Assembly (NCBI GenBank): GCA_036785375.1
Contig: JAWMAR010000070.1
Coordinates: 3,968,001 to 4,032,000, forward strand
Direction: 5' to 3'
DNA: 64,000 bases
DNA from: Leucoraja ocellata
Taxonomy: Eukaryota
Part shown: positions 7,356 through 55,945 of the stretch, piece after piece
Position numbering within the stretch: the first letter of the stretch is position 1
Layout: every line of letters starts with the position of its first letter
Notes under the pieces: generated by a model
The model's database searches: none
What the model was told of the DNA's origin: nothing
What the model saw: only the letters and a program-made list of their open reading frames with translations
Position numbers and translations under genes: made by a program

Positions 7356-7423
7356 GTAAATGCTTCAAAGATTAACCGTCTCGTTTCCTCCCATTGACTC
7401 CGTATTTCTTGCCCTTTGCCCAG

Positions 7424-7514
7424 TTACATCTCATGGGAAGTGGGGCGCTGGCTGTTCTTTCTCGTGCTTGTGATCTGGAGTATCTCAACCGCGATGTTCA
7501 CAAGAGGCTCTAAG
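7424..7514 (+). CDS. Gene A, transmembrane exon (YISWEVGRWLFFLVLVIWSISTAMFTRGSK)
   Basis: gcccag| acceptor, AAG|gtaggt donor; hydrophobic helix with Arg near its N-terminal end; 91 nt in A, B and C. Confidence 0.8.
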
Positions 7515-8159
7515 GTAGGTTGTATTGTCATCATGTTCATAAATTATAGGAGCAGAATTAGGCCGTTCAGCCCATCATATCTAATCGGCCCCCAATCACG
7601 GCTGACCTATCCTTCACTCGATCCCATTCACCTGCCTTCTCCCCGTAACCATTGACATCCTTATTTATCAAGAAAATGGAAATCTCCGCCTTAAAAATAT
7701 CAATTAATTTGGACAGATACAAAAATGCTGGAGTAGCTCAGCGGGACAGGCAGCATCTCCGGTGTGAATTAACTTGGCCTCCACAGCCTCCTGTGGCAAT
7801 GAAATCCATAGATTCACCAGAAGGGATTCGCCCAAAGCAATCCCTTCTCTTCGCCGAGTGTTTCCAAACGGTTTTCCATTAATGCTTTCATATATCCTGT
7901 CCATCGATAGAAACAAAAATCGTGCACGTTTTCATATCCTGAAGTTAAACCAAATCTCTATGTTGATGATATCACGAGGTTCTGTCAGGTTGTACGCGTG
8001 CAGGGTGGATTTCTGTGCCCGGTGTGGGTTCGTTGGCATTGGATTAAATAATTCGTGGGTTAGCATCTTGCAGACAGCAATGTGTTGAGAGTGGCCGGGA
8101 CAAATAAAGCGTGGTTCCCACTGTCAGTCTGTCTGATGACTTCACATTGTCTTTTGCAG

Positions 8160-8207
8160 AGACGCGATGACACAGAACCTCGCCACTCGACCCACGAATT
8201 ACAATGA
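8160..8207 (+). CDS. Gene A, terminal coding exon (RRDDTEPRHSTHELQ*)
   Basis: cttttgcag| phase-0 acceptor, TGA stop, two AATAAA ~200 bp downstream; coding sequence identical in B and C. Confidence 0.65.
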   Translation, partial: RRDDTEPRHSTHELQ

Positions 8208-12647: not shown

Positions 12648-12684
12648 ATGTGGATTCCCATTCTTCTCATCTCCTCGCTGCCGG
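12648..12684 (+). CDS. Gene B, leader exon (MWIPILLISSLP)
   Basis: ACAATG start, hydrophobic peptide, CCGG|gtgagt phase-1 donor; next exon completes the signal peptide (VSGA). Confidence 0.8.
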
Positions 12685-15600
12685 GTGAGTGAAAGTCAGA
12701 TCCTGATATTCCAATGATCAATGTTAGTTGGGGTCCCGTGCACCCTTTCTACGACACAGATGGTTAAGTGTGTGTAGACATGTAATGGGCGAGATGGAAC
12801 TCAGTGCATTGTGGTGATGGATTTGAAATCACATTTGAATATCTAGACAATGTTCGTAGTTTAACCACCGTTAACACGAGGTCTAATTGTATCCTGATGG
12901 TAGTTTATCGGCATAAAATAGCGAATGCATTTGGAGCAGATACTCCAAGACACCTGGACCGAAGGACAGAGGTTCCAACATCACCAGGAAGTTAATTCTA
13001 CACTAACAAAATGTGTTTACAACAGAGGTGGAAGTCAGGATTGTGGTCTCATTGTGTCAGTTCAAATATTCCCTGCATTTGTCCATCTCAACTCTGTCGC
13101 AAACCCAACAATTCCCCGGAGTCTGAGACTGAACCACTGTCCTCGCTCTATCCACCCACTCCCAACTCTCTCTCCATCCGCTCTCGGATCCGCGGCCCAG
13201 TCGTGCTGAAATCCAAGTTCAGTTTATTGTCACGTGTACCGAGGTACAGAGAAAAGCTTTATGTTGCATGCTAACCTGCCAGATACATGATTACAATCGA
13301 TCATCTTACATACATGAATGGGAAATAAAGTTTAGTGTAAGGTAAGGCCAGCAAAGTCCGATCAAGGATAGTCCGAGGGTCACCAAAGAGGTAGATAGTT
13401 CAGCACTGCTCTCTGGTTATGGGAGGGTGATTCCGATGTCTGATAACAGCTGGGAAGAAACATTCCCCGAATCTGGCGGTGTGCGTTGTCACGCTACTAC
13501 GCTCTCCGTTAATGGACCCGCTTTATTGTAACTCGTCCTCTGTCCTCAGTCAGGGCGTTGGAAAGCATTGGCGGCGGTGAATGTCTAAACACGGGTCGGC
13601 TCTCCGCGTCCGGGTGGGACTCGAGAAGGACCAGGCGCTGTCCACGGGCACCTGGGGGATTTCCGGGACATCTGGGCACCGCCTGTGGTTGAATGCACCC
13701 TTGACAAGTATTGTAACATCGTTGTATAGTAGTTTATTTAGTATATTTGTTTGTCTTGTATTATGGTGCTGGGTTCTTGTTTTATTGTAGTGTAAATATT
13801 ATTTTTATTAATTGAATAAATTATTTGATAATTTTAAAAAACACGGATCCGGCCCAGTGTCGGTTGAGAGATGAATGTTGGCAGCGTAGCCGGCGGCACC
13901 GCCAATTAAATAGCAAAGTGGGGTCTTTCTGTGAGGTGAGAGGCCGGGCACCGCCTGGGATTGTTGAAAGGCAGCTCCTGCAACACTGCCGCGCTCCCTC
14001 AGTACCGCACTGCGATCCCAGCCCAGTGTCTGCTCAGGGATCTGGAGTGGGAAGTGAACCCAAATTGTACTGACCCGGGGACAGAACACTGACACAACTG
14101 GTACAGTAACAGCACTGCCTGCAATTCAGACCGGAGACATTGGCCGTGAAGCAATATGACACATCATGGAANNNNNNNNNNNNNNNNNNNNNNNNNNNNN
14201 NNNNNNNNNNNNNNNNNNNNNNNNNNNNNNNNNNNNNNNNNNNNNNNNNNNNNNNNNNNNNNNNNNNNNNNNNNNNNNNNNNNNNNNNNNNNNNNNNNNN
14301 NNNNNNNNNNNNNNNNNNNNNNNNNNNNNNNNNNNNNNNNNNNNNNGCATTTTATTTGCTGGCGCCTTTCTGGACACCCAAGGACACCTTACAGGACATA
14401 AAATCACAATACAATTATCAATATTAAAATCAAGTTGCCAAAAAACAAAAAACAAAAAAAAACACAAAATATTTTAACTCATTAAAATCAGGGTGAACAT
14501 GGTGGAAGTTATGTCGGGTATGCTAATCTAAACAGGTGTGTTTTGAGTTGTGATTTGAATTGATCGATAGTGTCCAGGTGACGGATGGGAGGTGGGAGAG
14601 TGTTCCAGAGACGTGGAGCAGAGCAGCCAAAGGCTCTGGCAACCATTGTGCTGAGTCTTAATGTGAGGACAGTTAAAATTGCAGCTGAGGAGGAACGAAG
14701 TGACCGGGAAGGAGTGTATGGTGGCAGCAGGTCAGAGAGGTATTGGGGAGCAAGGTGCGGTAGGGCTTTGAAGATCAGCATTAAATTCTTGTAGTTAATC
14801 CGGTGGTGCACAGGGAGCCAGTGGAGCTGAGTGAGGATGGGTGTGATGTGGTCCGATGATCTGGTGCGGGTGATGATCCGGGCTGCAGAGTTCTGAATGC
14901 ATTGGAGGCGATGAAGTCGTTTATATGAAGAAGTAATCTTCAAAATGTATCTATTTCCATTAAACAGTTCATTTTCTCTCCAGCTGAAAGTTTCTCCCCT
15001 CAGTTTCAGGTGCACTGTGGGCAAAGAGGAATGTAAGAGGAGTTGTGGGAAGAGCGATCACAATCGATTGTTACTATGCAGCAGAGTACCGCTCACACAC
15101 AAAATACTGGTGCCGTGGGAGGAGTCTCCAATGTACAGTGTTGGTGGAAACAAATGAGCAACACGGACGGAATGGAAGATTGTCAATCACAGATAACCCG
15201 GCACGAGGAATATTTACTGTGACTGTGGACGATCTTCAGGATGGAGATACAGGATGGTACAGATGTGGAATTACAACATCTGCCGTCCATCCAATATTTA
15301 ACGTTCATCTCGAAGTATCTGACGGTACGTTTCGCAGCGATTGATTGACGTCTCCAGCAGAAAGACAATACAGGATTACAATCGATTATCCTACAGTGCA
15401 TAGATACATGAAAATTAAATAACGTTTAGTGTAAGGTAAAGGCAGCAAAGTCCGATCAAGGGTGGTCCGAGGGTCGTCAAAGAGGTAGATGGGAGTTCAG
15501 GACAGATCTCTGGGCGTGGTAGGATGATTCAGATGCCTGATAACTGCTGTGAAGAAATTGTCACCGCCAATGAAATAGCAAAGTGGGGTCTTTCTGTGAG

Positions 15601-18600
15601 GTGAGAGGCCGGGCACCGCCTGGGATTGTTGAAAGGCAGCTCCTGCAACACTGCCGCGCTCCCTCAGTACCGCACTGCGATCCCAGCCCAGTTTCTGCTC
15701 AGGGATCTGGAGTGGGAAGTGAACCCAAATTGTACTGACCCGGGGACAGAACACTGACACAACTGGTACAATAACAGCACTGCCTGCACTTCAGACAGGA
15801 GACATTGGCCGTGAAGCAATATGACACATCATGGAACTATTTAAGTTTTCTTTCATGTAATCTTCAAAATGTATCTATTTCCACTAAACTGTTCATTTGC
15901 TCTCCATCTGAAAGTTTCTCCCCTTCAGTTTCAGGTGCAGTGTGGGGAGAGATGTATGTAAGAGGAGTTGTGGGAAGTGCGATTGCAATCGATTGTCACT
16001 ATGCAGCAGAGTACCGCTTACACACAAAATACTGGTGCCGTGTGCAGAATCGCCAATGTACAGATATGGTGGAAACAATTGGGCTACGCGGAAGGAGTGG
16101 AAGAATGTCAATCACAGATAACCGGGCACGAGGAATATTTACTGTGACTGTGGAGGATCTTCTCTCTGGCGATACAGGCTGGTACAGATGTGGAATTGCA
16201 ACATCTAACGGCCGCCCAATGTTTAGCGTAGAACTCGTTGTATCTGACGGTACGTCTCGCAGCGATTGACTTGTCGTCTCCACTGACTCGCCACTTCCCG
16301 CCATTCTGAAAAGGACCCGTTCACTCCTACTCTTTGCTTCCTGTCTGCCAACCAATTTCCTATCCACGTCAACACCCTTCCATGCGCTCTCAATTTAGTC
16401 ACCAGTCTGCCGTGCGAAACCTTATCAAAGGATTTCTTGAAGTCTAGACGACATTCACTGGCTCACCTTCGTCCATTTTACTTGCCACCTCCTCAAAAAA
16501 TTCCAGAAGATTAGTCAGGCATGACTTTCCTTTCATAAATCCATGCTGACTTGGACTAATTATTTTACTGGTATCCAAATGCCCCATTATTACCTCTTTA
16601 ATAATTGACTCCGGCATCTTTCCCGACACCGAAGTCAGGCTAACTGGTCTGTAATTTCCCGTTTTCTCTCTTGCTCCTTTCTTGAAAAGTGGGATTTAAC
16701 TTCACTTTCACTTCACTTTTCACTCAGCGCATTTCCCTTCCTCTGATCTGTATGAAATGTCACCCGTCAGAAGTTTGCATTCAGACTCAAACTAATAATC
16801 CCACAGTGAGAAACAAGTGTTGCTCGCGGCCTGAATACCCGGAAAGTTAAAAAAAATATCAGTCCTCCCGGTGCAGTTCATACCGCTTCCCGCTCCCACC
16901 TCAGCGATCAGTCATTCCCTCCCCATCCCGCGCTCTCGCTCTCTCTCTCCCTCTGCCCTGTCAATGGGCCCCCAACCCCAACAGCCACTGTCCACCCACC
17001 GCCCGGCAGCCAGCCAGCCTCTCCACCCGGACATTTCCCCGGTGGTAAGCAGAATAAACTCATCTTTCACCCCATCAGCCGTCGCACACAACATATAATC
17101 CTCCAACATTTTCGCCACCTCCAACGGGATCCCATAACCAGATAACTAGCCACACCTTTCCATCTCCACCGCTTTACGAAGACACCGTTCCCTCCGTAAC
17201 TCCCTGGTCAACTGGTCCATCTGAAAGTTTCTCCCCTCACTTTCAGATGCAGTGTGGGCTGAGACGGATGTAAGAGGAGTTGTGGGAAGAGCGATCACAA
17301 TCGATTGTCACTATGCAGCAGCGTACAGCTCATACACAAAATACTGGTGTCGTGGGAGGAATCACCCGTGTACAGTTTTAGTGGAAGCAAATGGGCAACA
17401 CGTACGTAGTGGAAGAGTATCAATCACAGATATACCGGCACTAAGAATATTTGTTGTGACTGTGGAGGATCTTCACTCTGGAGATACAGGATGGTACAGC
17501 TGTGGAATTACAACATCTGGCGACCGTCCAATATTTAACGTACTTCTCCAAGTATCTGACGGTACGTTTCGCAGCGATTGACTTGACGTCTCCACTGAAA
17601 TACCTAATCTATGTTCTCTCCGGGAAGGGTCAGTGCAGCACCGATATCCCGAGGCTCCGCAGCAGTGCAGAGACCTGCGGGGAACGGGCGGGGGTCGGGA
17701 AACCCCACTCATGTTGCTCTCACCCAGTGCGGGCTCTGTTCCACTGAGCGGCCACCCACGTCAAGTGGGATGCTCAGCACATTTCCCTGCGTCTGAACTG
17801 TATGAAATGTCACCATGTCAGAGGTTTGTATTCCGACTCAAACTAATAATCCGACAGACTCCGCAACTCCCTGGTCAACTCGTCCTTTCCCACCCCGTCC
17901 CCAGATACCTTCCCCTACAACTGCAGGATATGCAACACCAGTCCCTATATATCTCCCCCTTTACTCCGTCCAAGGCTCCAACAGTATTTCCGGGTGAGTC
18001 AGAGGTTCACTTGCATCTCTTCTAACCTCATCTACTATATCCGCTGTTCCAGGTGTGAACAAGCGGATACAGTAGATGGGAGACCCAACGCAGGCTCGGC
18101 GATCGCTGAACAATTCCGCACAGTGTTCCTCGGCCTACGCTACATCACGATTGCAAAACACCTTCATTCCCCCTCCCATTCCCAAACTGATCTTTCTGTC
18201 CCGGACCTCCACCCCTGCATCCCAACATATGTTCTGAGGGACAACATTTTCCACACATTGGGTGATATGTATATGGAACCTGCTGCCAGGGGAATGTGTT
18301 AAGGCAGTTAGAATAGCAGCATTTAAAATATTTTTTTGATATTTGCGTAGATTGGGATCATTGCGAGTGATAAAGGTAGAACGTGAACATATGGAAATGG
18401 CCTAGAAAGACATGTTGGTCGGCATGAATGAGCTGTTGTGATGGGCATTTTCGGTTCTCTATAACACTAACCTTCTTCGGTTTTTGGGCTTCGCACACTC
18501 ACAGAGATGTAGATGAGCCGGTGAGATATCAACCGGACGGTTCGGGCTGAGATAAAGGGCTGCTGAGATTTAGCACGTGTTTGGTTTTTAACTGTTCATA

Positions 18601-21600
18601 CAGGTGACTGAATGTTTGCTCCATTCCCACAGAACCCATGTCTGCTCCTGTGCTCAGATATCTGTCACCAGCAAATGCCTCACGTCTCGGAGGCTCAGTG
18701 TCAGTGTCGTGTGAGTCTGTCCGTGGATCCCTTCCCATCCATTACACATGGTTTGAGAAGAACGAGGATGGGTGTTCAACGACCTTGTCTGGCAATCAAC
18801 TGGATCTGAGTTGTGAAATCCTCGAAGGTCAACACCGTCAATATTACTGCAGAGCCTCAAATAATCGTGGGACAAAATCCAGTGAAATACTCAACGTGAA
18901 AGTCTTCAAAGGAGCAGGAACGTGCAGTTATGTGACAGAAATGAACAATGCAGGTGAGTGTTCTTCTCGTGTCCCTGAACCTGCTGCTATTCATTCACCT
19001 TGTGGTGATGTTCATGGATTTTTTGTTATTTGCAGACGGCATCATTGCAGCCTCCGGGAGCTCATGGTGTAAAATGCGAGTTTGTTTGGGGGACTGGTAA
19101 ATGATTGCCTGTTGCTTTCACCTGGGAGGTGTTGAGAAATGTCAGCAAATGAGAGAAATACCTGCGGGTTGAGTGCATTCCATCAACATTATTTTCTGGC
19201 TGCCGCACTTTGAGACGGAGAAAGAAACCAAATTCATTCTGTTTGGATCCATCATCAGTTATAACCAAGGATGTAAAATTTCATGATCATGTTCATGATT
19301 TTAACTCTGTTAATTTGTGTTAAACTCCAGTAATCTCACAAAATGAAATTGGAATCTACTTGGCCGTCACTCCATCAAGTATAACCCTTACTTTTGTCAA
19401 AGATAATTTTGAAAAAAACTTCCCTGTAGGTGTGGAGACGCTCATATTGGAAGTCCAGAAGAGGGTGTGAATGGTTTACATCAGCGAGACCAATTTTATA
19501 CAAGGCCAGTTCTTAATAAACTATTACAGTGTCATTCGCCCTTGAGTCTTTATTACAAGATTTAATTCACCCTCCACTATATGTTCTTATGTTCTTTTGG
19601 TTATTATCATCTTATTTTTCCTTGTGCATAATTTTTATAGATAATTGATTTTGTCGCATGAGCAAAAAACATAAATTAACTAATTTACGCCAAAATAATT
19701 TCATTCGCCTTGGGTGAACCATTCATCAGTTTAAGAAGCACTGGCCTAGGCTACAATTTCGCCGAACACTTATGTTTGGTTTGTCATGGCCCAGAATCGC
19801 GCATGATAGACACCCCATCCTCAACCTCGTCCGCTAATGCAGAGCAGCAGCAGTTTGCACCATCTGCACGATGCACTGCAGTAACTCACCAAGACTCCCT
19901 AGACAGCGCCTTCCAATTGCAAGAGGCTCCGTGTTCAATGCATCATTCTTCACCATTCACACCCACATTGGCTGGGAAGCGCTTTGGAACGACCTGTGCA
20001 GGTGGTGAGGGCCGGTGTACAGTATCTGTCTCTCATCGCAATCTAGGTGGAATTCAACACAGCTAAGAAAATGAGTCGGCGGACTCCCTTGTATACTAGA
20101 ATGTGTATGTTTGTGAAAGGCTAATTTTGCTCTTCAATTTATGAAAGTTGTTTCCTTCAGTTTCAGGTGCACTGTGGGCAGAGAGCGAAGTGCGAGGGGT
20201 TGTGGGAAGAGCGATCTCAATCGATTGTCACTATGCAGCAGCGTACCGCTCACACACAAAATACTGGTGCCGTGAGACAAGTCGCCAGTGTCCACATGTA
20301 GTGGAAACAAATGGGAAACATGGACAGAGCGGAAGAGTGTCAATCACAGTTAACCCGGCACGAGGAATATTTACTGTGACTGTGGAGGATCTTCACTCTG
20401 GAGATACAGGATGGTACAGATGTGGAATTACTACACCTGGCGAACCAACATTTAAAGTATATCTCCAAGTATCTGAAGGTAGGTTTCTCAGTGAGTGACT
20501 TGATGTCTCCACTTTGGCAACGGGCAAAACATGTGTTAGGTGGGAGTCTGGTGCACAGTTCTGGTCGCCGCTTTATAAAACAAAGGATGTGAAAGGTTTG
20601 TAGAGTTTACAGAAACATGTTCACCCGGATATTTAGTAATAGTGTACAAATGTAACATTGAAACTGATCCTGTGGCCCACAGAGTCCTCACCAACTAGCG
20701 ATCACCGGTCACACTAGTTCTATGTTATTCCACTTCCCCATTCGCTCCCTGCACACAATTCTACAATACCGCCATTCACACACCTCATTAGTGCAACAGT
20801 ATCACTATCAACTATTTTATGCAAGGAAATTAAAAAGTTGTTGATAGTGATTCTGTTGCACTAATGAGGTGCATGACTGGCGGTATTTGAAGTGTTTGAA
20901 TGTTGATATTGTAGAATTGTGGCAGAGGTTTAGATTAAAACATATTAACGGCAGATGCTGGAATTGTAAAACAAAGAGAGATGGTGCTGCTGTGTCCTGG
21001 CACAGTGGCAGACATGGTAGTTCTGGCAGCTGGGAGGATGGAGAGGCACAGAGATAATTAAATCTGGTAAATCGTGTGGAGAATGAGCAGGGAAGACTTA
21101 CAAGGATGTTGCGATGACTTGAGGGCCTGGCATACAGGGAGGGGTTGAGCAGATTGGGGCTTTATTTCTTGGAGCGCAGCAGGATGTGGGTTGATCTGAT
21201 GGCAGGTAAAACATTATGCGAGGAATAGATCGAGTAAATACACAGAGTCTTTTACTCAGAGTAGGGGAATCCAGAACCGGAGGACATATGTTTAATATGA
21301 GGGGGGAATGATTTAACAAGAACCTAGGGAGTAATGTTTTTACATAAAGGTTGGTAGGTACATGACATGAACTGCCGACAGAAGTAGTTGTGGCAGGTAC
21401 TATCGTAACATTTAAGAAAATATTGGACAGTTATATGAATATGATATGTTTAGAGGATTAAGGGCCAAGAAAGGGCAGGTGGAACTAGTGCAAATTGGGC
21501 GTGTTGGTCAGCGCGGGCAAGTTAGACCGAAGGGCCTGTTTCTACGCTGCATGACTCTATGACTCTATGTAGATGGATGGGTTAGATTCCAACTTGGCGT

Positions 21601-24600
21601 CTCTGGCTAAGATACAGAGATGGCGGATATTGGCGATTTTCAGATGTTCACTCAGTGTCTGACTGTTTGCTCCTTTCCCACAGAACCCGTGTCTGTTCCT
21701 GTGCTTGGATTTCTGTCACCAGCCGATGTCTCCTGTCTCGGGGGCTCAGTGACAGTGTCCTGTGAGTCGGTCCGGGGATCGCTTCCCATTAGCTACACCT
21801 GGTATGAAAATACCCCATCTGGGGATTCAAAGATCTCAGACAACAATGCCCTGGATCTACATTGTCAATCCTTCAAACACCAGCACCATCAATATTCTTG
21901 CACAGCCTCAAATAATAATGGATCCAAATCCAGTGAAATGGTCAACGTGTCCATCTCCAGCAGTGACGTTCCCTGTAGTTTCCTAGTGAAAATCAACGGC
22001 ACTGGTAAGTAGTGGAGGGAATGAGGAGAAGAAGGGGAAAGTGGGGGCGGGGTGTTTCATAAGATCACGTGATAGAAGCAGAAATAGACCATTCACTCAT
22101 GGCTGATCTATCTCCCCCTCTTCACCCCATTCTCCTGCCTTTGCCACATAACCCCCGACGCCCTGAAATCCATGCACGTTATTTAAATGAAGGAATTATG
22201 GCCCATTTGTCAATACTTGTTTGCTGGGCTCCAGACATAGATTTCCCAGTGCTGGTGTAGACCAGCTTCTCGGCTAGAACTTCCTCTTATGTTTACACTG
22301 CTTTAAACTGGGTTTGCAGTGACATCAGCCCAAGCACTTTCACTTTCCCACCATCATCGCCACATGACCGACACTCAAATATGGGAAGGGAACAGAAACT
22401 AGCAGTAAATGTGGCCACAGTTAACTCGTGGACGACGGTATCAGATTTGGTCCACTGTGTTAATGTTGACCATTCAGTACCATCGATACAATCCCATTTA
22501 CCAGCACCTCGTCCATTGTGACAATTCAGGCACCTCAATTTTCTGCGTTTAAAAATATGTCTTGAGACCCTTGAAGCATCCTGCTCCTGAACCTAACCAT
22601 ATGTTCTCCACATTTACACATGTCTGCCGTGCAAATTTTTCTAAAAATACAATCTTTGCAGCTCACAGTTTTGCACACCTGTAATAGGTCCCCCATTCCT
22701 CACCTGTTCTGCATGGACTTTTATAAAGCCCCTTCCAACCCCTCCCCATAACTGTAATGTTTCATCCCAAGCAATATTCCTCTCAAGTGAAATTGCACTC
22801 TTTAGATTACATTATGGATACAGGTTTGAAACAGGCTCATCGGCCCACTGAGTGCACACAGCCCAGTATTCACCAATAGACTAGTTCCATAGGGACAATT
22901 TACAGAAGCCAATTAACCTACAAACCTGCACGACTTTGGAACGCTGGGGGAAACTGGAGTACTTGAAGAAACCCACGCGATCACAGGTAGGAGGGCCAAA
23001 TTCGGTATAGACAGCATCCGTAGTCAGGATCAAACCTGGGTCTCTGGCCCTGGAAGGCAGCAACTCCACCGCTGCGGCACCGTGCCGTCTACAGAGCCAA
23101 CGTGGTTAAAAGCATTCCTGCTTATCATGACAACATCTCCCATCTGCTGCAAATCGGAAAATCATACCTCCTTGCTCAACTGCAAGTGAAAAGCAGTGAA
23201 ACTGGATTTTATTTCCTTGTTCCAACAGGTCATGAATATTCTTGTGAAAATTCGATAACATCCAATTACTCTGCAAGGTAAACCGCTCTGTTTCCAATGA
23301 AAATTGCATGTACTAATTGCTGGTGTTTTGATTGGGAATGCTTTAATTGGGGGGAAGTTGTGCCTTCCTTTCACTGGCATTAAATGCGTGAGAGTGAGAA
23401 TGCATGATCTGAATGCACAGTGGCAAAGCCTATAGAAACACAGTCTCGCAACGCCACGACATAGGTTTAATGGGTGTTGTCTGTGTGTGATATGCATGTT
23501 TTGCCTTTAATTGTGTAGGTTTCATTCAGTTTCCTCCCAGCTCCCAAAGATGTGCCAGTTGTAAATTGTCCCATGTGTACAGGAGAGTGGCTGAATCTGT
23601 GAAGAATGGGTGGGGTGGGGGAGGGGGCAGGGGGTGGGTGGGGGTGGGGTGTGGTAGTTGATGAGAAAGTGGGGGAAATAAAAATAGGATTGACACAGGA
23701 ATCATGTGAATGCAGTTGACGGAAATAGCCTGTTTCTATACTGTGTTTCTCTATGGGTCTTTGATCCAATGAACCTAAATGTCACGAAGCACAATTGTTG
23801 TACAAGTTTCAAGCCTGACACCAAATATAAACGTATCTATTAAATATTATTTAATACAATAAATATAACTTGCAAACCAGTTATTAGTTAACTCATCAGA
23901 AGGGGAATCGCACTGGTTTACATCTCATTGTGTTGTGTACATGCTTGGATGATAAGAACAAGTTCCTCCATTTGATGCTTTTCAGAGAGCGCTCCCTGCA
24001 GTATTCAACATGACTGCTCCATCACTCACCTCATCCCATGCTGTGAGATTAATATAGTTCCCAAACCTTAGTCTTCCAGTTTAGCTTTGCTGTGAATTCC
24101 TCTTGTGTGGTGCTGATAGGAAAATGCTTTATGAATGATGGGCTACGCCACACTCCCCATGATATCACTTGTGGCAACACCTTGTCATTGATGGGGCCAT
24201 ACACCAGAAAGTCGCTGGCGCAGAATGTCAGAAAATTGTCTTGAATCAGACCGAATACAGCAAAATGAGTTAACTGACTCTCTCTTACTCGTTGATAATT
24301 GAAATCATTAAACATTCAATCATAATATATTCATGAAAATGAGAACACTTTGTTATTTATCTTAATACAATTGAAATATATCTGACTTTCTATCACACTC
24401 TTGTGTTATACTTGCGTTAGCAAATGTTCATGAAAGCCACGCCGTTATGAGCGAATCTTTAACCGATTTTTCGAACACAATTCCTCCATCCACACACCTA
24501 CCGCGTTGATCCACGAAGTATCCAGGGCGTGACATTAAGCACAATCATTTTAAATTTTATTTTATTAATTGGCCTCATCTGTTTCCATTTTTGTTGCCCA

Positions 24601-27600
24601 TCTCCCTTCCATTATTGGAATTGATCCGTTTTTATTATTCCTATCCCAATGGATTTTATTATAAACTTCCTTGCAGCTGCATTTTATTTCTTCCAGGGTA
24701 TCACACTGTTCTTTGTATCCTTCCACATCCACAGTTTCCCTCTCCCGTGACTCTCAGTCTGAAGAAGGGTCTCGACCCGGAACTTCGCGCATTCGTTCTC
24801 TCCAGAGAGATGCTGCCACTCCCGCTGTTTCTCCAACATTTTGTGTCCATCTGTTTTGTATTCACTGCCCCAACTCATTGTATTCCACTGCCCCGACTCA
24901 TGACTTATTTAGTCTGAAGAAGGGTTTCGGCCCGAAACGTTGCCTATTTCCTTCGCTCCATAGATGCTGCTGCACCCGCTGAGTTTCTCCAGCTTTTTTG
25001 TGTAATCTCGTGATTTATTTATATGTCTTGTCTGAATCCATTTAACCGCGTAGTCTCTCATTCCCAGTCTTGTAGCCATGCCCCAGCAATGACGTCAACA
25101 ATTGGTGATCATATGTTGTCCCCCCCGCCTCCCCACAGTCCAACACCCGTTCTTTTACAAAGATGGTCTCCACTGACGCTGCCGCTTCGCCCCGCTCCAC
25201 TTCACCAAGATTACGAAGCAAATAACAGGTAAATGATGCAAAGATTAACCGTCTCGTTTCCTCCCATTGACTCTGTATTTCTTGACCTTTGCCCAGTTAC
25301 ATCTCATGGAAAGTGGGGCGCTGGATGTTCTTTCTCCTGCTTGTGATCTGGAGTATCTCAACCGCGGTGTTCGCAAGAGGCTCAAAGGTAGGGTTTACTG
25401 TCATCATGTTCATAAATTATAGGAGCAGAATTAGGCCATAGAAACATAGAAAATAGGTGCAGGAGTAGGCCATTCGGACCTTCGAGTCTGCACCGCCATT
25501 CAATATGATCATGGCTGATCATCCAACTCAGTATCCTGTACCTGCCTTCTCTCCATACCCCCTGATCCCTTTAGCCACAAGGGCCACATCTAACTCCCTC
25601 TTAAATATAGCCAATGAACTGGCCTCAACTACCTTCTGCGGCAGAGAATTCCAGAGATTCACCACTCTCTGTGTGAAAAAGGTTTTCCTCATCTCAGTCA
25701 TACAAGATTTCCCCCTTACCTTTAAACTGTGACCCCTTGTTCTGGACTTCCCCAACATCGGGAACAATCTTCCTGCATCTAGCCTATCCAACCGCTTAAG
25801 AATTTTGTAAGTTTCTATAAGATCCCCCCTCAAACTTCTAAATTCTAGCGAGTACAAACCGAGTCTATCCAGTCTTTCTTCATATGAAAGCCCTGACATC
25901 CCAGGAATCAGTCTGGTGAACCTTCTCTGTACTCCCTCTATGGCAAGAATGTCTTTCCTCAGATTAGGAAACCAAAACTGTACGCAATACTCCAGGTGTG
26001 GTCTCACCAAGACCCTATACAACTGCAGTAGAACCTCCCTGCTCCTATACTCAAATCCTTTTGCTATGAATGCTAACATACCATTCGCCTTCTTCACTGC
26101 CTGCTGCGCCTGCCTGCTTACTTTTAATGACTGGTGTACCATGACACCCAGGTCTCGTTCCATCTCTCCCTTTCCTAATCGGCCACCATTCAGATATAAG
26201 TCTACTTTCCTGTTTTTGCCACCAAAGTGGATAACCTCACATTTATCCACATTATACTGCATCTGCCATGCATTTGCCCACTCACCGAGCCTATCCAAGT
26301 CACCTTGCAGCCTCCTAGCATCCTCCTCACAGCTAACACTGCTCCCCAGCTTCGTGTCATCCGCAAACTTGGAGATGTTGCATTCAATCCGCTCGTCCAA
26401 ATCAATAATATATATCGTAAATAGCTGGGGTCCCATCACTGAGCCTTGCGGCACCCCACTAGTCACTGCCTGCCATTGTGAAAAGGACCCGTTTACTCCT
26501 ACTCTTCCTGTCTGCCAGCCAGTTCTCTATCCACATCAACTAACACATCTAATCATAGACTAACTGGTCTGTAATACCCCGTTTTCTCTCTCCCTCCCTT
26601 TTTAAAAAGTGGGGTTACATTAGCTACCCTCCAATCCTCAGGAACTACTCCAGAATCTAAAGGGTTTGAAAAATTATCACTAATGCATCCACTATTTCTG
26701 GGGCTACTTCCTTAAGTACTCTGAGGTGCAGCCTATCTGGCCCTGGGGATTTATCGGGCTTTAATCCATTCAATTTACCTAACACCACTTCCCGGCTATC
26801 CTGGATTTCACTCAGTTCCTCCATCTCATTTGACCCCCGGTCCCCGGCTATTTCCGGCAAATTATTTATGTCTTCCTTAGTGAAGACAGAACCAAAGTAG
26901 TTATTCAATTGGTCTGCCATGTCCTTCTTCCCCATGATCAATTCACCTGTTTCTGACTGCAAGGGACCTACTTTTGATTTAACGATTCTTTTTCTCTTCA
27001 CATATCTATAAAAGCTTTTGCAGTCAGTTTTTATGTTCCCTGCCAGTTTTCTTTCATAATCTATTTTTCCCTTTCCTAATTAAGCCGTTTGTCCTCCTCT
27101 GCTGGTCTCTGAATTTCTCCCAGTCCTCTGGTAGGCTGCATTTTCTGGCTAATTTGTACGCTTCATCTTTTGTTTTGATACGATCCCTGATTTCCCTTGT
27201 TATCCACGGATGCACTACCTTCCCTGATTTATTTTTTTGCCAAACTGAGATGAACAATTGTTGTAGTTCATCCATGCAGTCTTTAAATGCCTTCCATTGC
27301 ATATCCACCGTCAACCCATTAAGAATCAATTGCCAGTCTATCTTGGCCAATTCACGTCTCGTACCCTCAAAGTTACCTTTCTTTAAGTTCAGGACCCTTG
27401 TTTCTGGATTAACAATGCCACTTTCCATCCTAATGAAGAACCCAACCATATTATGGTCACTCTTGCCCAAGGGGCCACGCACAACAAGATTTCTAACTAA
27501 CCCTTCCTCATTACTCAATACCCAGTCTAGAATAGCCTGCTCTCCCGTTGGTTCCTCTACATGTTGGTTTATAAAACTATCCCGCATACATTCCAAGAAA

Positions 27601-28262
27601 TCCTCTCCCTCCATTCAGCTCATCATATCTAATCGGCCCCCAATCACGGCTGATCTATCCTTCTCACTCGATCCCATTCACATGCCTTCTCCCCATAACC
27701 ATTGACATCCTTATTTATCAAGAAAATGAAAATCTCCGCCTTAAAAATATCAATTAATTTGGACAGATACAAAAATGCTGGGGTAGCTCAGCGGGCCAGG
27801 CAGCATCTCCGGTGTGAATTAACTTTGCCTCCACAGCCTCCTGTGGCAATGAAATCCATAGATTTACCAGAAGGGATTCGCACAAAGCAATCCCTTCTCT
27901 TCGCCGAATGTGTCCAAACGGTTTCCATTAATGCTTTCATATATCCTGTCCATCGATAGAAACAGAAATCGTGCACGTTTTCATATCCTGAAGTTAAACC
28001 AAATCTCTATGTAAATGATATCACGAGGTTTTGTCACGTTGTACGCGTGCAGGGTGGATTTCTGTACCCGGTGTGGGTTCGTTGGCAGTGGATTAGCTAA
28101 TTCGTGGATTAGCATCTTGCAGGCAGCAATGTGTTGGGAGCGGTCGGGTTAAATAAAGCGTGGTTCCCACTGTCAGAGAGTCTTCACATTTGACTTCACA
28201 TTTGTCTTTTGCAGAGACGCGATGACACAGAACCTCGCCACTCGACCCACGAATTACAATGA
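12648..28262 (+). CDS. Gene B (spliced): complete six-Ig-domain CD300/pIgR-like (MDIR-type) membrane receptor L-V-V-V-C-V-C-stalk-TM-tail, ~713 aa if all listed exons are joined
   Basis: Ten phase-compatible exons sum to 2142 nt, open from ATG 12648 to TGA 28262. Confidence 0.8.
14172..14346. other. Assembly gap (175 N)
   Basis: Run of n; paralogs hold an (AAT)n microsatellite here. Confidence 0.98.
14172..14930 (-). mobile_element. L2-clade LINE 3' fragment with (TAT)n tail (paralogs 32645-33281, 55868-56530)
   Basis: LQCIQNSAARIIT..HITPILTQLHWLPV..SAPRLWNTLP..FKSQLKTHLF; absent from the duplicated segment upstream of V2. Confidence 0.8.
15004..15324 (+). CDS. Gene B, V1 exon
   Basis: cctcag| acceptor, GACG|gtacgt donor; IDCYY..KYWCRGRSLQC..DTGWYRCG. 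Confidence 0.88.
15929..16249 (+). CDS. Gene B, V2 exon
   Basis: cttcag| acceptor, GACG|gtacgt donor; KYWCRVQNRQC..DTGWYRCG. Confidence 0.88.
16285..16697 (-). mobile_element. Old CR1 RT fragment in V2-V3 intron (paralogs ~33927-34341, ~57882-58298)
   Basis: SQHGFMKGKSCLTNLLEFFEE; YLDFKKSFDKVPH in the paralogs. Confidence 0.85.
17247..17561 (+). CDS. Gene B, V3 exon (second acceptor; upstream AG is AC in this copy)
   Basis: cctcactttcag|ATGCA; GACG|gtacgt; KYWCRGRNHPC..DTGWYSCG. Confidence 0.85.
17860..18217 (+). mobile_element. Penelope-like element fragment (degenerate GIY-YIG endonuclease); longer paralog ~59500-60260
   Basis: QRFTCISSNLIYYIRCSRC resembles the start of a PLE GIY-YIG domain. 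Confidence 0.6.
18633..18953 (+). CDS. Gene B, first C2-type Ig exon
   Basis: cccacag| acceptor, GCAG|gtgagt donor; CESVRGSLPIHYTW..YYCRASN. Confidence 0.9.
20161..20478 (+). CDS. Gene B, V4 exon
   Basis: ccttcag| acceptor, GAAG|gtaggt donor; KYWCRETSRQC. Confidence 0.9.
21684..22004 (+). CDS. Gene B, membrane-proximal C2-type Ig exon
   Basis: cccacag| acceptor, ACTG|gtaagt donor; CESVRGSLPISYTW..YSCTASN. Confidence 0.9.
23229..23277 (+). CDS. Gene B, stalk exon (GHEYSCENSITSNYSA)
   Basis: ccaacag| acceptor, AAG|gtaaac donor; 49 nt as in paralogs. Confidence 0.7.
25297..25387 (+). CDS. Gene B, transmembrane exon (YISWKVGRWMFFLLLVIWSISTAVFARGSK)
   Basis: gcccag| acceptor, AAG|gtaggg donor; hydrophobic helix. 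Confidence 0.8.
25437..27611 (-). mobile_element. 5'-truncated, internally deleted CR1 LINE in the last intron of gene B
   Basis: RT SGVPQGS/FADD; catagaaa tail; absent in A (7560) and C (49810). Confidence 0.92.
28215..28262 (+). CDS. Gene B, terminal coding exon
   Basis: ttttgcag|AGACGC..TGA; same peptide as gene A. Confidence 0.65.
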   Translation, partial: RRDDTEPRHSTHELQ

Positions 28263-31098: not shown

Positions 31099-31135
31099 AT
31101 GTGGATTCCCATTCTTCTCATCGCCTCGCTACCCG
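31099..31135 (+). CDS. Gene C, leader exon (MWIPILLIASLP)
   Basis: CCCG|gtgagt phase-1 donor. Confidence 0.8.
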
Positions 31136-32644
31136 GTGAGTGAAAGTCAGATCTTGATAATCCAATGATCAATGTTAGTTGGGGTCCTGTGCACCCTTTC
31201 CACAGCAGAGATGGTTAAGTGTGTGTAGACATGTAATGGGGGAAATGGAACTCAGTGCATTGTGGTGATGGATCTGAAATCACATTTGAATATCTAAACA
31301 ATGTTCGTAGTTTAACCACCGTTAACACGTGGTCTAATTGCATCCTGATGGTAGTTTATCGGCATAAAATAGCGAATGTATTTGGAGCAGATACTCCAAG
31401 ACACCTGGACCGAAGGACAGAGGTTCCAACATCACCAGGAAGTTAATTCTACACTAACAAAATGTGTTTACAACAGAGGTGGAAGTCAGGATTGTGGTCT
31501 CATTGTGTGAGTTCAAATATTCCCTGCATTTGTCCATCTCAACTCTGTCGTAAACCCAACAATTCCCCGGAGTCTTAGACTGAACCACTGTCCTCGCTCT
31601 ATCCACCCACCGCCAACTATCTCTCCATCCGCTATCGGTGCCGCCGCCCAGTCGTGCTGAAATTCAAGTTCAGTTTATTGTCGCGTGTACCGAGGTACAG
31701 AGAAAAGCTTTTTGTTGCATGCTAACCTGCCAGATACATGATTACAGTCGATCCCCTTACAGCGCATAGATACATGAATGGGAAATAACGTTTAGTGTAA
31801 GGTAAGGCCAGCAAAGTCCGATCAAGGGTAGTCCGAGGGTCACCAAAGAGGTAGATAGTTCAGCACTGCTCTCTGGTTATGGGAGGATGATTCGGATGTC
31901 TGATAACAGCTGGGAGGAAACTTTCCCCGAATCTGGCGGTGTGCGTTTTCACGCCAACAACGCTCTCCGGTAATGGACCCGCTTTATTGTATCTCGTCCG
32001 TCCTCTGTCCACAGTCAGGGCGTTGGAAAGCATTGGCGGCGGTGAATGTCTAAACACGGGTCGGCTTTCCGCGTCCGGGTGGGACTCGAGAAGGACCAGG
32101 CGCTGTCCACAGGCACCTGGGGGATTTCCGGGACATCTGGGCACCGCCTGCGGTTGAATACATCCTTGACAAGCATTGTAACATAGTTGTATAGTAGTGT
32201 ATTTAGTATATTTGTTTGTCTTGTATTATGGTGCTGGGTTCTTGTTTTATTGTAGTGTAAATATTATTTTTAATAATTGAATAAATTATTTGATAATTTA
32301 AAAAAAACACGGGTCCGGTCCAGTGTCGGTTGAGAGATGAATGTTGGCAGCGTAGCCGGCGGCACCGCCAATAAAATAGCAAAGTGGGGTCTTTCTGTGA
32401 GGTGAGAGGCCGGGCACCGCCTGGGATTGTTGAAAGGCAGCTCCTGCAACACTGCCGCGCACCCTCAGTACCGCACTGCGATCCCAGCCCAGTTTCTGCT
32501 CAGGGATCTGGACCCAAATTGTACTGAACCGGGGACAGAACACTGACACAACTGGTACAATAACAGCACTGCCTGCACTTCAGAGCGGAGACATTGGCCG
32601 TGAAGCAATATGACACATCATGGGATGATTTAAGTTTTCTTTCA

Positions 32645-32723
<79 letters not shown>

Positions 32724-35700
32724 TTAATAATAATAATGCATTTTATTTGCTGGCGCCTCTCTGGACACCCAAGGACACCTTACAGGACATAAAATCACAA
32801 TACAATTATCAATATTAAAATTAAGTTGCCAAAATACAAAAAACAAAAAAATACACAAAACATTTTAAGTCATTAAAATCAGGGTGAACATGGTGGAAGT
32901 TATGTCCGGTATGCTAATCTAAACAGGTATGTTTTGAGTTGTGATTTGAATTGATCGATAGTGTCCAGGTGACGGATGGGAGGTGGGAGAGTGTTCCAGA
33001 GACGTGGGGCAGAGCAGCCAAAGGCTCTGGCAACCATTGTGCTGAGTCTAAATGTGGGGACAGTTAAAATTGCAGCTGAGGAGGAACGAAGTGACCGGGA
33101 AGGAGTGTATGGTAGCAGCAGGTCAGAGAGCTATTGGGGAGCAAGGTGGTGTAGGGCTTTGAAGGTCAGCAGTAAAATCTTGTAGTTAATCCGGTGGTGC
33201 ACAGGGAGCCAGTGGAGCTGAGTGAGGATGGGTGTGATGTGGGCCGATGATCTGGTGCGGGTGATGATCCGGGCTGCAGAGCTCCTGCAACACTGCCGCG
33301 CTCCCTCAGTACCGCACTGCGATCCCAGCCCAGTTTCTGTTCAGGGATCTGGAGTGGGAAGTGAACCCAAATTGTACTGACCCGGGGACAGAACACTGAC
33401 ACAACTGGTACAATAACAGCACTGCCTGCACTTCAGACCGGAGACATTGGCCGTGAAGCAATATGACACATCATGGAACTATTTAAGTTTTCTTTCATGT
33501 AATCTTCAAAATGTATCTATTTCCACTAATCTGTTCATTTGCTCTCCATCTGAAAGTTTCTCCCCTTCAGTTTCAGGTGCAGTGTGGGGAGAGATGTATG
33601 TAAGAGGGGTTGTGGGAAGTGCGATTACAATCGATTGTCACTATGCAGCAGAGTACCGCTCACACACAAAATACTGGTGCCGTGTGCAGAATCGCCAATG
33701 TACAGATATGGTGGAAACAATTTGGCTACGCGGAAGGAGTGGAAGAGTGTCAATCACAGATAACCGGGCACGAGGAATATTTACTGTGACTGTGGAGGAT
33801 CTTCACTCTGGCGATACAGGCTGGTACAGATGTGGAATTGCAACATCTAACGGCCGCCCAATGTTTAGCGTAGAACTCCATGTATCTGACGGTACGTTTC
33901 GCAGCGATTGACTTGTCGTCTCCACTGACTCGCCACTTCCCGCCATTCTGAAAAGGACCCGTTCACTGCTACTCTTTGCTTCCTGTCTGCCAACCAATTT
34001 CCTATCCACGTCAACACCCTTCCATGCGCTCTCAATTTAGTCACCAGTCTGCCGTGCGGAACCTTATCAAAGGATTTCTTGAAGTCTAGATACACTACAT
34101 TCACTGGCGCACCTTCGTCCATTTTACTTGCCACCTCCTCGAAAAATTCCAGAAGATAGTCAGGCATGATTTTCCTTTCATAAATCCATGCTGACTTGGA
34201 CTAATTATTTTACTGCTATCCAAATGCCCCATTATTACCTCTTTAATAATTGACTCCGGCATCTTTCTCGCCACCGAAGTCAGGCTAACTGGTCTGTAAT
34301 TTCCCGTTTTCTCTCTTGCTCCTTTCTTGAAAAGTGGGATTTAACTTCACTTTCACTTCACTTTTCACTTCAAGTGGAATACTCAGCGCATTTCCCTTCC
34401 TCTGAACTGTATGAAATGTCACCCGTCAGAAGTTTGCATTCAGACTCAAACTTATAATCCCACAGTGAGGAACAAGTGTTGCTCGCGGTCTGAATACCCG
34501 GAGAGTTAAAAAAAATATCAGCCCCCAGAGCTCATCAGTCCTCCCGGTGCAGTTCATACCGCTTCCCGCTCCCACCTCAGCGATCAGCCATTCCCTCCCC
34601 ATCCCGCGCTCTTTCTCTCTCTCCCTCTGCCCCGTCAATGGGCCCCCACCCCCAACAGCCACTGTCCACCCACCGCCCGGCAGCCAGCCAGCCTCTCCAC
34701 CCGGACATTTCCCCGGTGGTAAGCAGAATAAACTAATCTTTCACCCCATCAGCCGTCGCACACAACATATAATCATCCAACATTTTCGCCACCTCCAACG
34801 GGATCCCATAACCAGATAACTAGCTACACCTTTCCTTTTCCACCGCTTTCCGAAGACACCGTTCCCTCCGTCACTCCCTGGTCAACTGGTCCATCTGAAA
34901 GTTTCTCCCCTCAGTTTCAGATGCAGTGTGGGCAGAGACGGTTGTAAGAGGAGTTGTGGGAAGAGCGATCACAATCGATTGTCACTATGTAGCAGAGTAC
35001 AGCTCACACACAAAATACTGGTGCCGTGGGAGGAATCGCTCGTGTACAGTTTTAGTGGAAGCAAATGGGCAACACGGACGTAGTGGAAGAGTGTCAATCA
35101 CAGATATACCGGTACTAAGAATATTTGCTGTGACTGTGGAGGATCTTCACTCTGGAGATACAGGATGGTACAGCTGTGGAATTACTACACCTGGCGACCG
35201 TCCAATATTTAACGTACATCTCCAAGTATCTGACGGTACGTTTCGCAGCGCTTGACTTGACGTCTCCACTGAAATGCCTAATCTATGTTCTCTCCGGGAA
35301 GGGTCAGGGCAGCACCGATATCCCGAGGCTCCGCAGCCCAAGTGTGATTGGCTCTAGCCCAAGTGTGAGGAGAGGGGTGAAAACAGTTGAAAACAGTTAA
35401 AAGGCCAAGGACGCACCGTCTTTGTTCAGTACTGCTGTAGATTTGGGAGGAACAACAGCAGCAACAGATTAGCAAGATATACCACTGATTGGCTCTAGCC
35501 CAAGTGTGAGGAGAGGGGTGAAAACAGTTGAAAACAGTTGAAAACAGTTAAAAGGCCAAGGACGCACCGTCTTTGTTCAGTACTGCTGTAGATTTGGGAG
35601 GAACAACAGCAGCAACAGATTAGCAAGAGATACCACTGATTGGCTCTAGCCCAAGTGTGAGGAGAGGGGTGAAAACAGTTGAAAACTGAGGAATTGGCTG

Positions 35701-55865: not shown

Positions 55866-55867
<2 letters not shown>

Positions 55868-55945
<78 letters not shown>
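55868..55945. repeat. (AAT)n microsatellite (L2 tail)
   Basis: 26 perfect AAT units. Confidence 0.95.

What the first reader, a model, noticed from the sequence alone, without database searches (positions are those of the whole stretch)
12648..28262. Tandem family of chimeric six-domain receptors: four CD300/pIgR-type V domains interleaved with two FCRL/PECAM/allergin-like C2 domains (V-V-V-C-V-C)
Seen: ten phase-compatible exons form one open frame, and the layout recurs four times. Known: the extra C-C' disulfide (KYWC-x6-C) and DTGWYxCG mark CD300/pIgR/Fc-alpha-mu-R-type V domains. CExxRGSLPIxY resembles FCRL, PECAM1 and allergin-1 C2 domains. Modular receptors of this general kind (MDIRs) are described from skate. 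Inference: this long V3-C-V-C arrangement may be an undescribed branch. Tandem pIgR-type V domains make it a candidate Ig-binding or lipid-sensing receptor in a lineage where I know of no clear pIgR ortholog.
Basis: partly seen in the sequence, partly recalled or inferred. Interest (0 to 1): 0.8.

Follow-up and report, generated by a model that had tools for sequence, protein, structure and literature searches.

The report
Skate MDIR immune-receptor gene cluster
Four tandem copies of a skate immune-receptor gene from the MDIR family described in 2006, here with one or two extra outer domains; the genes look real, but they are ordinary members of that family.

Summary
On the + strand, ten exons (12648-28262) with canonical AG/GT borders and compatible phases give one open frame of 707 codons: leader, V1, V2, V3, C1, V4, C2, stalk, transmembrane exon, short tail. 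The layout recurs in four tandem copies: two are cut by the window ends and one lacks V1. The N gap (14172-14346) lies inside intron 1, and no coding frame crosses it.

This is not an undescribed branch. C1-V4-C2-stalk-TM-tail is colinear with clearnose-skate "Modular domain immune-type receptor 5" (73-90% identity per exon). MDIR3 is V-V-C-V-C. NCBI annotates dozens of V/C mosaics as "pIgR-like" or "FCRL5-like" in skates, rays, sharks and a chimaera. The exact order V-V-V-C-V-C was found in 0 of 133 retrieved V+C proteins, so it is a domain-number variant.

All three visible 3' ends are the short-tail type, with Arg at the outer end of the TM and no tyrosine. They are probably adaptor-coupled counterparts of the ITIM-bearing MDIR3-type genes.

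RNA reads give low, exon-limited, strand-consistent cover of C1, V4, C2 and the stalk, and none of V3. The C1-to-V4 joint was not seen. The ligand is unknown.

The parts
12648..12684 (+). Copy 1 leader exon (MWIPILLISSLP plus 1 base), donor GTGAGT, phase 1
   Evidence: matches the N-terminus of MDIR5
14172..14346 (.). Assembly gap, inside intron 1 (leader to V1); not coding
15004..15324 (+). V1 exon (CD300/pIgR-type V-set; acceptor at 15004 or 15010), phase 1-1
15929..16249 (+). V2 exon (acceptor at 15929 or 15935), phase 1-1
17247..17561 (+). V3 exon, phase 1-1
   Evidence: no RNA depth in run X9
18633..18953 (+). C1 exon (FCRL-type C2/I-set Ig), phase 1-1
   Evidence: RNA depth in X9; acceptor used in a spliced contig of X2
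20161..20478 (+). V4 exon (membrane-proximal V subtype shared with MDIR3 d4 and MDIR5 d3; acceptor at 20161 or 20167), phase 1-1
   Evidence: donor after 20478 fits the X2 contig
21684..22004 (+). C2 exon (second FCRL-type Ig subtype), phase 1-1
   Evidence: RNA depth in X9
23229..23277 (+). Stalk exon (G)HEYSCENSITSNYSA, phase 1 in, 2 out
   Evidence: 87% identical to MDIR5 residues 441-455
25297..25387 (+). Transmembrane exon (S)YISWKVGRWMFFLLLVIWSISTAVFARGSK, phase 2 in, 0 out
   Evidence: 90% identical to MDIR5 residues 457-486
25437..27611 (-). LINE reverse-transcriptase fragment inserted in the TM-to-tail intron, in copy 1 only
28215..28262 (+). Tail exon RRDDTEPRHSTHELQ-stop
   Evidence: identical in copies 0 and 2
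1..8207 (+). Copy 0, 5' end cut by the window: C1 (1-261 partial), V4 1475-1786, C2 4103-4423, stalk 5721-5769, TM 7424-7514, tail 8160-8207
31099..50453 (+). Copy 2 (V1 deleted, so V-V-C-V-C): leader 31099-31135, V2 33577-33891, V3 34921-35235, C1 40561-40881, V4 42080-42391, C2 46404-46724, stalk 48007-48055, TM 49670-49760, tail 50406-50453
54314..64000 (+). Copy 3, 3' end cut by the window: leader 54314-54350, V1 56608-56922, V2 57532-57846, V3 58879-59193, C1 60690-61010, V4 62223-62534, C2 from 63717 to the window end

Best explanation
The window holds four tandem paralogues of a skate MDIR (modular domain immune-type receptor) gene of the MDIR5 type. Each encodes a type I membrane glycoprotein. 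Its ectodomain is assembled from phase 1-1 Ig exon cassettes of two origins: CD300/pIgR-like V exons and FCRL-like C2 exons. In copies 1 and 3 the order is V-V-V-C-V-C, and in copy 2 it is V-V-C-V-C. A short Cys-containing stalk follows, then a transmembrane helix headed by W(K/E)VGRW, then a 15-residue tail without tyrosine.

Shown here: the exon structure, the domain types, the family membership, the tandem duplication, and the absence of ITIM exons in the window.

Inferred: the protein sits on leukocytes and signals through an ITAM adaptor recruited by the Arg at the outer end of the TM, as Arg-bearing receptors that pair with FcR-gamma do (established knowledge, recalled). On this reading it is the activating or short-tail partner of the ITIM-bearing MDIR3-type receptors, which share its C1-V4-C2 core. 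The N-terminal V array, the least conserved part, would be the ligand-binding end. The ligand is unknown; a lipid or polyanion as for CD300, or an immunoglobulin, are the two candidates. Because every Ig exon is phase 1-1, cassette skipping could give shorter isoforms.
For: Exon model with 9/9 AG acceptors, 9/9 GT donors, compatible phases and no internal stop. The same exons are open in all copies.

V exons: Pfam V-set; nearest solved relatives pIgR and CD300, with both extra cysteines aligned. C exons: FCRL5 at E 1e-41 and 1e-55.

Named relatives: UniRef 'Modular domain immune-type receptor 3, 5 and 2' of Rostroraja eglanteria. Per-exon identity to MDIR5: C1 87%, V4 85%, C2 86%, stalk 87%, TM 90%, tail 73%, colinear with residues 121-501.

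In the V tree, V4 of all copies groups with MDIR3 d4 and MDIR5 d3 (SH-aLRT 91). V1, V2 and V3 each form a clade that spans the copies (98, 96 and 99), so the V triplication is older than the gene copies.

ITIM-tailed relatives share the core: Amblyraja P0154 and MDIR3 are 79-92% identical over C1, V4 and C2. A tblastn with ITIM tails found no tail exon in the window.

Pooled pN/pS between copies is 0.65 for V and 0.68 for C. This indicates relaxed but real constraint.

The polyA RNA run X9 gives depth only on the exon bins of C1 (0.9-3.1), V4 (1.5-1.9), C2 (5.2-6.5) and the stalk (1.2), almost all with the first mate on the - strand. It gives 0 in repeat-free intron bins. An X2 contig joins a V-exon end (20476/20478) to the C-exon start (18631/18633).
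Against: No read or contig in the visible output shows the leader-V1-V2-V3-C1 or C1-V4 joints of this gene. X9 depth on V3 (17290-17689) is 0. The reads were accepted at 90% likeness or more and may come from paralogues or another species (the run is labelled organism E).

The order V-V-V-C-V-C was found in 0 of 133 retrieved proteins that hold both domain types, so no gene model or cDNA supports the six-domain form.

The adaptor pairing, the cell type and the ligand are inference only. As I recall its abstract, the MDIR paper classed MDIR5 as lacking activating or inhibitory motifs. I could not read that paper.
Confidence: 0.85

Rival explanations
1. The ten exons are real, but the six-domain protein is not the main product. 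The N-terminal V exons are alternative or skipped cassettes, and the usual mRNAs are MDIR5-like V-C-V-C or MDIR3-like V-V-C-V-C forms, plus a soluble form that skips the stalk exon.
For: All six Ig exons are phase 1-1. The characterised cDNA proteins MDIR5 (V-C-V-C) and MDIR3 (V-V-C-V-C) have fewer V domains. X9 depth is 0 on V3 but positive on C1, V4 and C2. NCBI lists several isoforms per gene in related rays. Models P0004, P0005 and P0156 end in VTSHGKWGAGCSFSCL, the reading obtained when C2 is joined straight to the TM exon.
Against: V1, V2 and V3 are kept open with intact AG/GT sites in every copy that has them (8 of 8 exons). Each is a distinct clade conserved across the copies. That is unexpected for exons that are never used. 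The X9 depth is very low overall, since about 6 in 100 of the run was read.
Confidence: 0.4
2. It is the cartilaginous-fish functional counterpart of pIgR or Fc-alpha/mu-R: an epithelial or myeloid receptor that binds polymeric IgM through its tandem pIgR-type V domains.
For: The summed match of one V exon to mouse pIgR is E 3e-53 over five domains. The CDR1-like stretch (YRSHTKYWC) aligns with pIgD1 NRHTRKYWC. Reviews state that no PIGR or FCRL gene is known in cartilaginous fish (passages read in PMC4016189, and PMC13337447).
Against: Per single domain, CD300 proteins score higher than pIgR D1 (70-72 against 54 bits). The ectodomain contains FCRL-type C2 domains, which pIgR lacks. The cytoplasmic tail has 15 residues without tyrosine or any long sorting region. 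The genes belong to a large multigene family with ITIM and short-tail forms, the pattern of leukocyte regulatory receptors. No binding data exist.
Confidence: 0.1
3. The copies are decaying pseudogenes kept open by chance after recent duplication.
For: Exon divergence between copies (2.5-5%) is similar to intron divergence (about 4-7%). Pooled pN/pS is high at 0.65-0.68. LINE insertions sit in several introns. Copy 2 has lost V1.
Against: 20 of 20 Ig exons and all stalk, TM and tail exons are open with canonical splice sites. pN/pS is below 1. A +1/-1 shift in C1 of copy 1 is compensated within 8 codons. RNA cover is limited to the exons.
Confidence: 0.05

Closest known systems
MDIR5 (Modular domain immune-type receptor 5, Rostroraja eglanteria; P0166, 501 aa)
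   Same: C1-V4-C2-stalk-TM-tail is colinear at 73-90% identity per exon. It has the same leader (MWIPILLISSLP), the same W-K-V-G-R-W transmembrane start and the same short ..HELQ tail.
   Different: MDIR5 has one N-terminal V (V-C-V-C). The window genes have three (copies 1 and 3) or two (copy 2). The window V1-V3 are only 68-73% identical to the MDIR5 N-terminal V.
MDIR3 (Rostroraja eglanteria; P0155, 701 aa) and Amblyraja radiata 'pIgR-like' P0154 and P0157
   Same: V-V-C-V-C ectodomain with the same four domain subtypes. C1, V4 and C2 are 79-92% identical.
   Different: They have a different stalk and TM and a long tail with 3-4 ITIM-like tyrosine motifs. No such tail exon is in the window.
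Polymeric immunoglobulin receptor (pIgR)
   Same: V-set domains carry the second C-C' disulfide, and several occur in tandem.
   Different: pIgR has V domains only and a long sorting tail. Here two FCRL-type C2 domains are interleaved, the tail is 15 residues, and the gene is one of many paralogues.
CD300 / CMRF35-like molecules
   Same: Best per-domain match of the V exons (2q87 CMRF35-H 72 bits, CLM-1 70 bits). CD300 also occurs as paired ITIM and charged-TM forms (established knowledge, recalled).
   Different: CD300 proteins have a single V domain followed by a mucin-like stalk.
FCRL5 / FCRL4 (Fc receptor-like)
   Same: The C exons share the CE..RGSLPI.Y and YYC.A.N motifs and match five to six FCRL5 domains.
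   Different: FCRLs are built of C2/I-type domains only and carry ITIM or ITAM-like tails. Here the C2 domains alternate with V domains.
Carp SITR and zebrafish MDIR-like genes
   Same: Mixed V/C2-type plus CD300-like V domains in one protein, compared by its authors with skate MDIRs (passages read in PMC3031540).
   Different: SITR is a soluble two-domain teleost protein. It was not compared by sequence here.

Membership tests
MDIR (modular domain immune-type receptors, clearnose skate) | Close sequence relationship to the named MDIR proteins | tested here: met
   MDIR3, MDIR5 and MDIR2 are named hits. Window exons C1 to tail are colinear with MDIR5 at 73-90% identity. V4 is 90% identical to MDIR3.
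MDIR (modular domain immune-type receptors, clearnose skate) | Ectodomain built from a small set of Ig-domain subfamilies in varying number and order | tested here: met
   Four subtypes are present: N-terminal V, C1, V4 and C2. 133 retrieved relatives show more than 30 V/C arrangements.
MDIR (modular domain immune-type receptors, clearnose skate) | Large multigene family in a cartilaginous fish | tested here: met
   Four tandem copies lie in 64 kb. The relatives that carry a source's name come from skates, rays, sharks and Callorhinchus.
MDIR (modular domain immune-type receptors, clearnose skate) | The family definition as written in Cannon et al. 2006 (domain counts of one to six, signalling classes) | not testable with these tools
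   The paper is not held. Its content is recalled from the abstract only. MDIR1 and MDIR4 were not retrieved.
pIgR | Ectodomain of V-set domains only (2-5) with the D1-type extra disulfide | tested here: not met
   The extra disulfide is present, but two C2-type domains are interleaved.
pIgR | Long cytoplasmic tail with sorting and transcytosis signals | tested here: not met
   After the TM exon the tail is RRDDTEPRHSTHELQ.
pIgR | Binds J-chain-containing polymeric Ig | not testable with these tools
   This needs a binding experiment.
CD300 | Single V-set domain with a C-C' disulfide | tested here: not met
   The V type matches, but the protein has 5-6 Ig domains.
FCRL | Ectodomain of FCRL-type C2/I domains only, with a tail carrying ITIM or ITAM-like motifs | tested here: not met
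   The C exons match FCRL5. However, V domains predominate and the tail has no tyrosine.

The most novel reading that the evidence does not exclude
MDIRs are the cartilaginous-fish Fc receptors that reviews describe as missing. On this reading, one family still unites the pIgR/Fc-alpha-mu-R/CD300-type V domain and the FCRL-type C2 domain, which bony vertebrates keep in separate gene families. The extended V3 tip of these skate genes would be an avidity module for polymeric IgM or IgW.
Probability: 0.1. Interest if true: 0.75.

Novelty: new member of a known kind. Interest (0 to 1): 0.3.

Why it matters
Reviews from 2014 and 2026 (passages read) state that cartilaginous fish lack PIGR and FCRL genes, and they ask how these animals handle Fc-receptor and Ig-transport functions. 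This locus, and the many relatives annotated as 'pIgR-like' or 'FCRL5-like', show that both domain types exist there, fused in one receptor family known since 2006 but never given a ligand. A precise exon map of a paired short-tail cluster gives ready constructs for binding and adaptor assays. The locus itself adds only a domain-number variant.

Tried and rejected
1. Reading the MDIR paper. PMC3701310, PubMed id 16738934 and the review PMC2823954 are not held. What I say about their content is recalled. Full-text searches for MDIR terms found one relevant paper, PMC3031540, which only cites the family.

2. Splice joints from reads. All 15 joints shown lie between repeats at 20728-20735 and 22890-22908, and 218 more were not shown. 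No joint at an exon border of this gene is visible.

3. Structure of the C exon from a six-row alignment. Mean pLDDT was 42, too poor for a fold search, so none was run.

4. Orthologous locus in Amblyraja via the look-up of encoding contigs.

5. Search for a hydrophobic TM exon by hydropathy alone. It missed the real TM exon, which homology then found in another frame of the 'VTSHGKW' exon.

6. ITIM-tail exons. Tblastn with the tails of P0001, P0003, P0012 and P0017 found none in the window.

7. PECAM1 likeness of the C exons. PECAM1 is absent from the rows. Allergin-1 was not testable.

8. The third homologous-protein search and the second structure job were not used. MDIR1 and MDIR4 were therefore not retrieved.

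9. Supplementary files of papers were not asked for.


Full report
What is there. The window has one N run, 14172-14346. A motif scan of all six frames found 12 KYWC sites, 11 DTGWY-type sites and 8 GSLPI sites. All are on the + strand, inside stop-free segments that read as Ig domains. The exons are leader 12648-12684, V1 15010-15324, V2 15935-16249, V3 17247-17561, C1 18633-18953, V4 20167-20478, C2 21684-22004, stalk 23229-23277, TM 25297-25387 and tail 28215-28262. All nine acceptors are AG and all nine donors GT. The phases chain correctly (0>1, six exons 1>1, 1>2, 2>0, 0>stop). There is no internal stop, and the sum is 2124 nt. V1, V2 and V4 have a second in-frame AG 6 nt upstream. The cDNA-derived MDIR proteins read ..LPVSGALWA.. 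and ..VSDVSGAVWA.. at these joints, so that site is probably used, which adds two residues per exon.

The gap. The N run lies in intron 1, 1487 nt after the leader donor and about 660 nt before V1. Its left flank (12175-14171) and right flank (14347-18219) align colinearly with copies 2 and 3, where the matching ends lie about 100-115 nt apart (coordinates only). No exon frame crosses it, so the open frame does not depend on it. Its true length in this copy is unknown, and I did not fill it.

Recurrence. Self-comparison shows four tandem units.
- Copy 0 is cut at the window start: part of C1, then V4, C2, stalk, TM and tail to 8207.
- Copy 1 is complete.
- Copy 2 runs from the leader at 31099 to the tail end at 50453. 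It lacks V1 through a deletion between repeated intron segments, so it is V-V-C-V-C.
- Copy 3 starts with the leader at 54314 and is cut by the window end inside C2.
All 20 Ig exons are open. The three visible tails are identical, RRDDTEPRHSTHELQ. The TM exon begins WKVGRW in copy 1 and WEVGRW in copies 0 and 2. Introns hold LINE insertions.

Domain types. The four V exons hit Pfam V-set (E 6e-9 to 3e-13). The C exons hit Ig_3, Ig_2 and Ig_C17orf99. Against solved structures, V1 ranks mouse and human pIgR first (E 3e-53 and 2e-42), but only because five domains add up. The best single pIgR domain scores 54 bits, while the single-domain CD300 proteins score 70-72 bits. Both cysteines of KYWC-x6-C align with the D1 pair of pIgR. 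C1 ranks FCRL5 first (E 1e-41, best domain 30 bits, with CE..RGSLPI.Y aligned to CEAQRGSLPILY). CD22 d6-d7 and FCRL4 follow. A profile of six C exons raises FCRL5 to 1e-55. PECAM1 is not among the rows seen.

Family. A scan of 1.84 billion representatives with V1 gave 2759 hits, 134 of them at E 1e-30 or better. The best hits are mosaics of the same V and C domains. The names given by the sources are mostly 'polymeric immunoglobulin receptor-like', 'Fc receptor-like protein 5', 'CMRF35-like molecule' or 'uncharacterized'. The species include skates (Amblyraja, Leucoraja, Rhinoraja), rays and sawfish (Hemitrygon, Hypanus, Mobula, Narcine, Pristis), sharks (Mustelus, Scyliorhinus, Hemiscyllium, Chiloscyllium, Carcharodon, Cetorhinus, Heptranchias, Heterodontus, Rhincodon, Stegostoma) and Callorhinchus. 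Three hits are the UniRef entries 'Modular domain immune-type receptor 3, 5 and 2' of Rostroraja eglanteria.

By my local HMMs, MDIR3 is V-V-C-V-C-TM with 4 ITIM-like motifs, MDIR5 is V-C-V-C-TM with the WKVGRW start, and MDIR2 is V-C-TM. Exon by exon, the window gene is colinear with MDIR5 residues 121-501: C1 87%, V4 85%, C2 86%, stalk 87%, TM 90%, tail 73%. Its V1-V3 are 68-73% identical to the MDIR5 N-terminal V.

In a tree of 52 V domains, V4 of all copies groups with MDIR3 d4, MDIR5 d3 and the matching domains of three other skates (SH-aLRT 91). V1, V2 and V3 each form a clade that spans the copies (98, 96 and 99). The V triplication is therefore older than the gene duplications. No retrieved protein is more than 92% identical to any Ig exon of the window, so the species is a skate not among those annotated here.

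Is the order new? Of the 269 proteins fetched, 133 hold at least one C-type domain. The commonest orders are V-C-TM (34), V-C (17), V-C-V-C (16 without and 11 with a detected TM) and V-C-V-C-V-C (8 with and 5 without). V-V-C-V-C occurs 4 times and V-V-V-C once. V-V-V-C-V-C occurs 0 times. My TM call is a crude hydropathy rule, and several models are evident fusions. I recall that the MDIR paper's abstract gives one to six ectodomains, but I could not read the paper, and MDIR1 and MDIR4 were not retrieved. The order is therefore unseen in what I could examine, but it is a small step within a family defined by such variation.

Expression. The search for runs with the C1 exon found no holder on record as RNA. 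I laid four runs on 17290-23289 at 90% likeness or more. In the polyA RNA run X9, 2257 reads were laid: 1989 in the 90-95% class and 2214 only partly fitting. Most are repeat-derived. Outside the repeats, depth appears only on exon bins:
- C1: 0.94, 3.1 and 1.7
- V4: 1.54 and 1.86
- C2: 6.45 and 5.2
- stalk: 1.24
This depth is almost all with the first mate on the - strand, which fits a + strand RNA in the usual stranded libraries. The repeat-free intron bins (18290-18489, 19090-19489, 19890-20089, 20490-20689, 22290-22689) and the V3 bins (17290-17689) are 0. A 412-letter contig of run X2 lies with letters 25-274 on 20218-20476 and letters 275-412 on 18631-18768. That is a V-exon end spliced to a C-exon start at exactly the modelled borders, because the letters AG are shared. 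In genome order this joint runs backwards, so the contig comes from a paralogue and says nothing about this gene's exon order.

Selection. Between copies, pooled pN/pS is 0.65 for V exons and 0.68 for C exons (small counts, and C1 of copy 1 carries a compensated frame shift). This pattern, with all frames open, fits a young immune multigene family and not decay.

How it probably works. Shown: a type I membrane protein with five or six Ig domains, a Cys-bearing stalk, a TM helix headed by Arg, and a 15-residue tail without tyrosine. Shown: relatives with the same C1-V4-C2 core but ITIM tails, and no ITIM exon in this window. Inferred: these are the short-tail, adaptor-coupled partners in a paired receptor system. 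The less conserved N-terminal V array would bind the ligand. An earlier scan note places an ITIM-tailed gene about 16 kb before the window; I could not test that. A role as a pIgR-like transporter is unlikely given the tail and the family pattern. An Fc-receptor role is open.

Comparison and verdict. These are MDIR-family genes of the MDIR5 type. They are related to pIgR, CD300 and FCRL only at the level of single domains, and they fail the architecture tests for each of those families. Reviews still state that cartilaginous fish lack PIGR and FCRL, so the family deserves functional work. This locus, however, adds a domain-number variant and not a new kind of receptor.

Noticed in passing
window 23229-23277 and 25297-25345: If the 49-nt stalk exon is skipped, C2 joins the TM exon in another frame and reads VTSHGKWGAGCSFSCL-stop. 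NCBI models P0004, P0005 (Amblyraja) and P0156 (Leucoraja) end in this same sequence. It could be a soluble isoform or an annotation artefact.
   Followed up: partly
window 13030-13460: Intron 1 holds a weak relic of a further V exon: GSQDCGLIVSVQIFPAFVHLN, tblastn E 1.3 against the end of V1. It is followed by an 83% match to the intron that follows V1. An older N-terminal V cassette may have decayed here.
   Followed up: partly
window 35900-39900 (+), 43261-44544 (+), 25437-27611 (-): LINE elements sit in introns. Copy 2 has a near full-length one with a GDSL-esterase ORF1 and an endonuclease plus reverse-transcriptase ORF2. Truncated relatives lie in copy 2 (V4-C2 intron) and copy 1 (TM-tail intron).
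   Followed up: partly
window C exons, e.g. 18635-18952: All six complete C exons keep four invariant cysteines (positions 26, 60, 72 and 97 of the exon translation). These are the canonical pair plus a second pair that involves the C-terminal extension, so an extra disulfide is possible. The structure model was too poor to check this.
   Followed up: partly
window 18760-18790 (C1 of copy 1): Copy 1 reads NEDGCSTTL where copies 0, 2 and 3 read NEHWVSTTV. Blastn shows two gaps, which indicates a +1/-1 frame shift compensated within about 8 codons.
   Followed up: no
window 13897-14171 against 15562-15836: The 275 nt just left of the gap are 98% identical to the intron stretch before V2. This is higher than the 82-88% seen between the V units themselves, which suggests recent conversion or a possible assembly collapse at the gap.
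   Followed up: no
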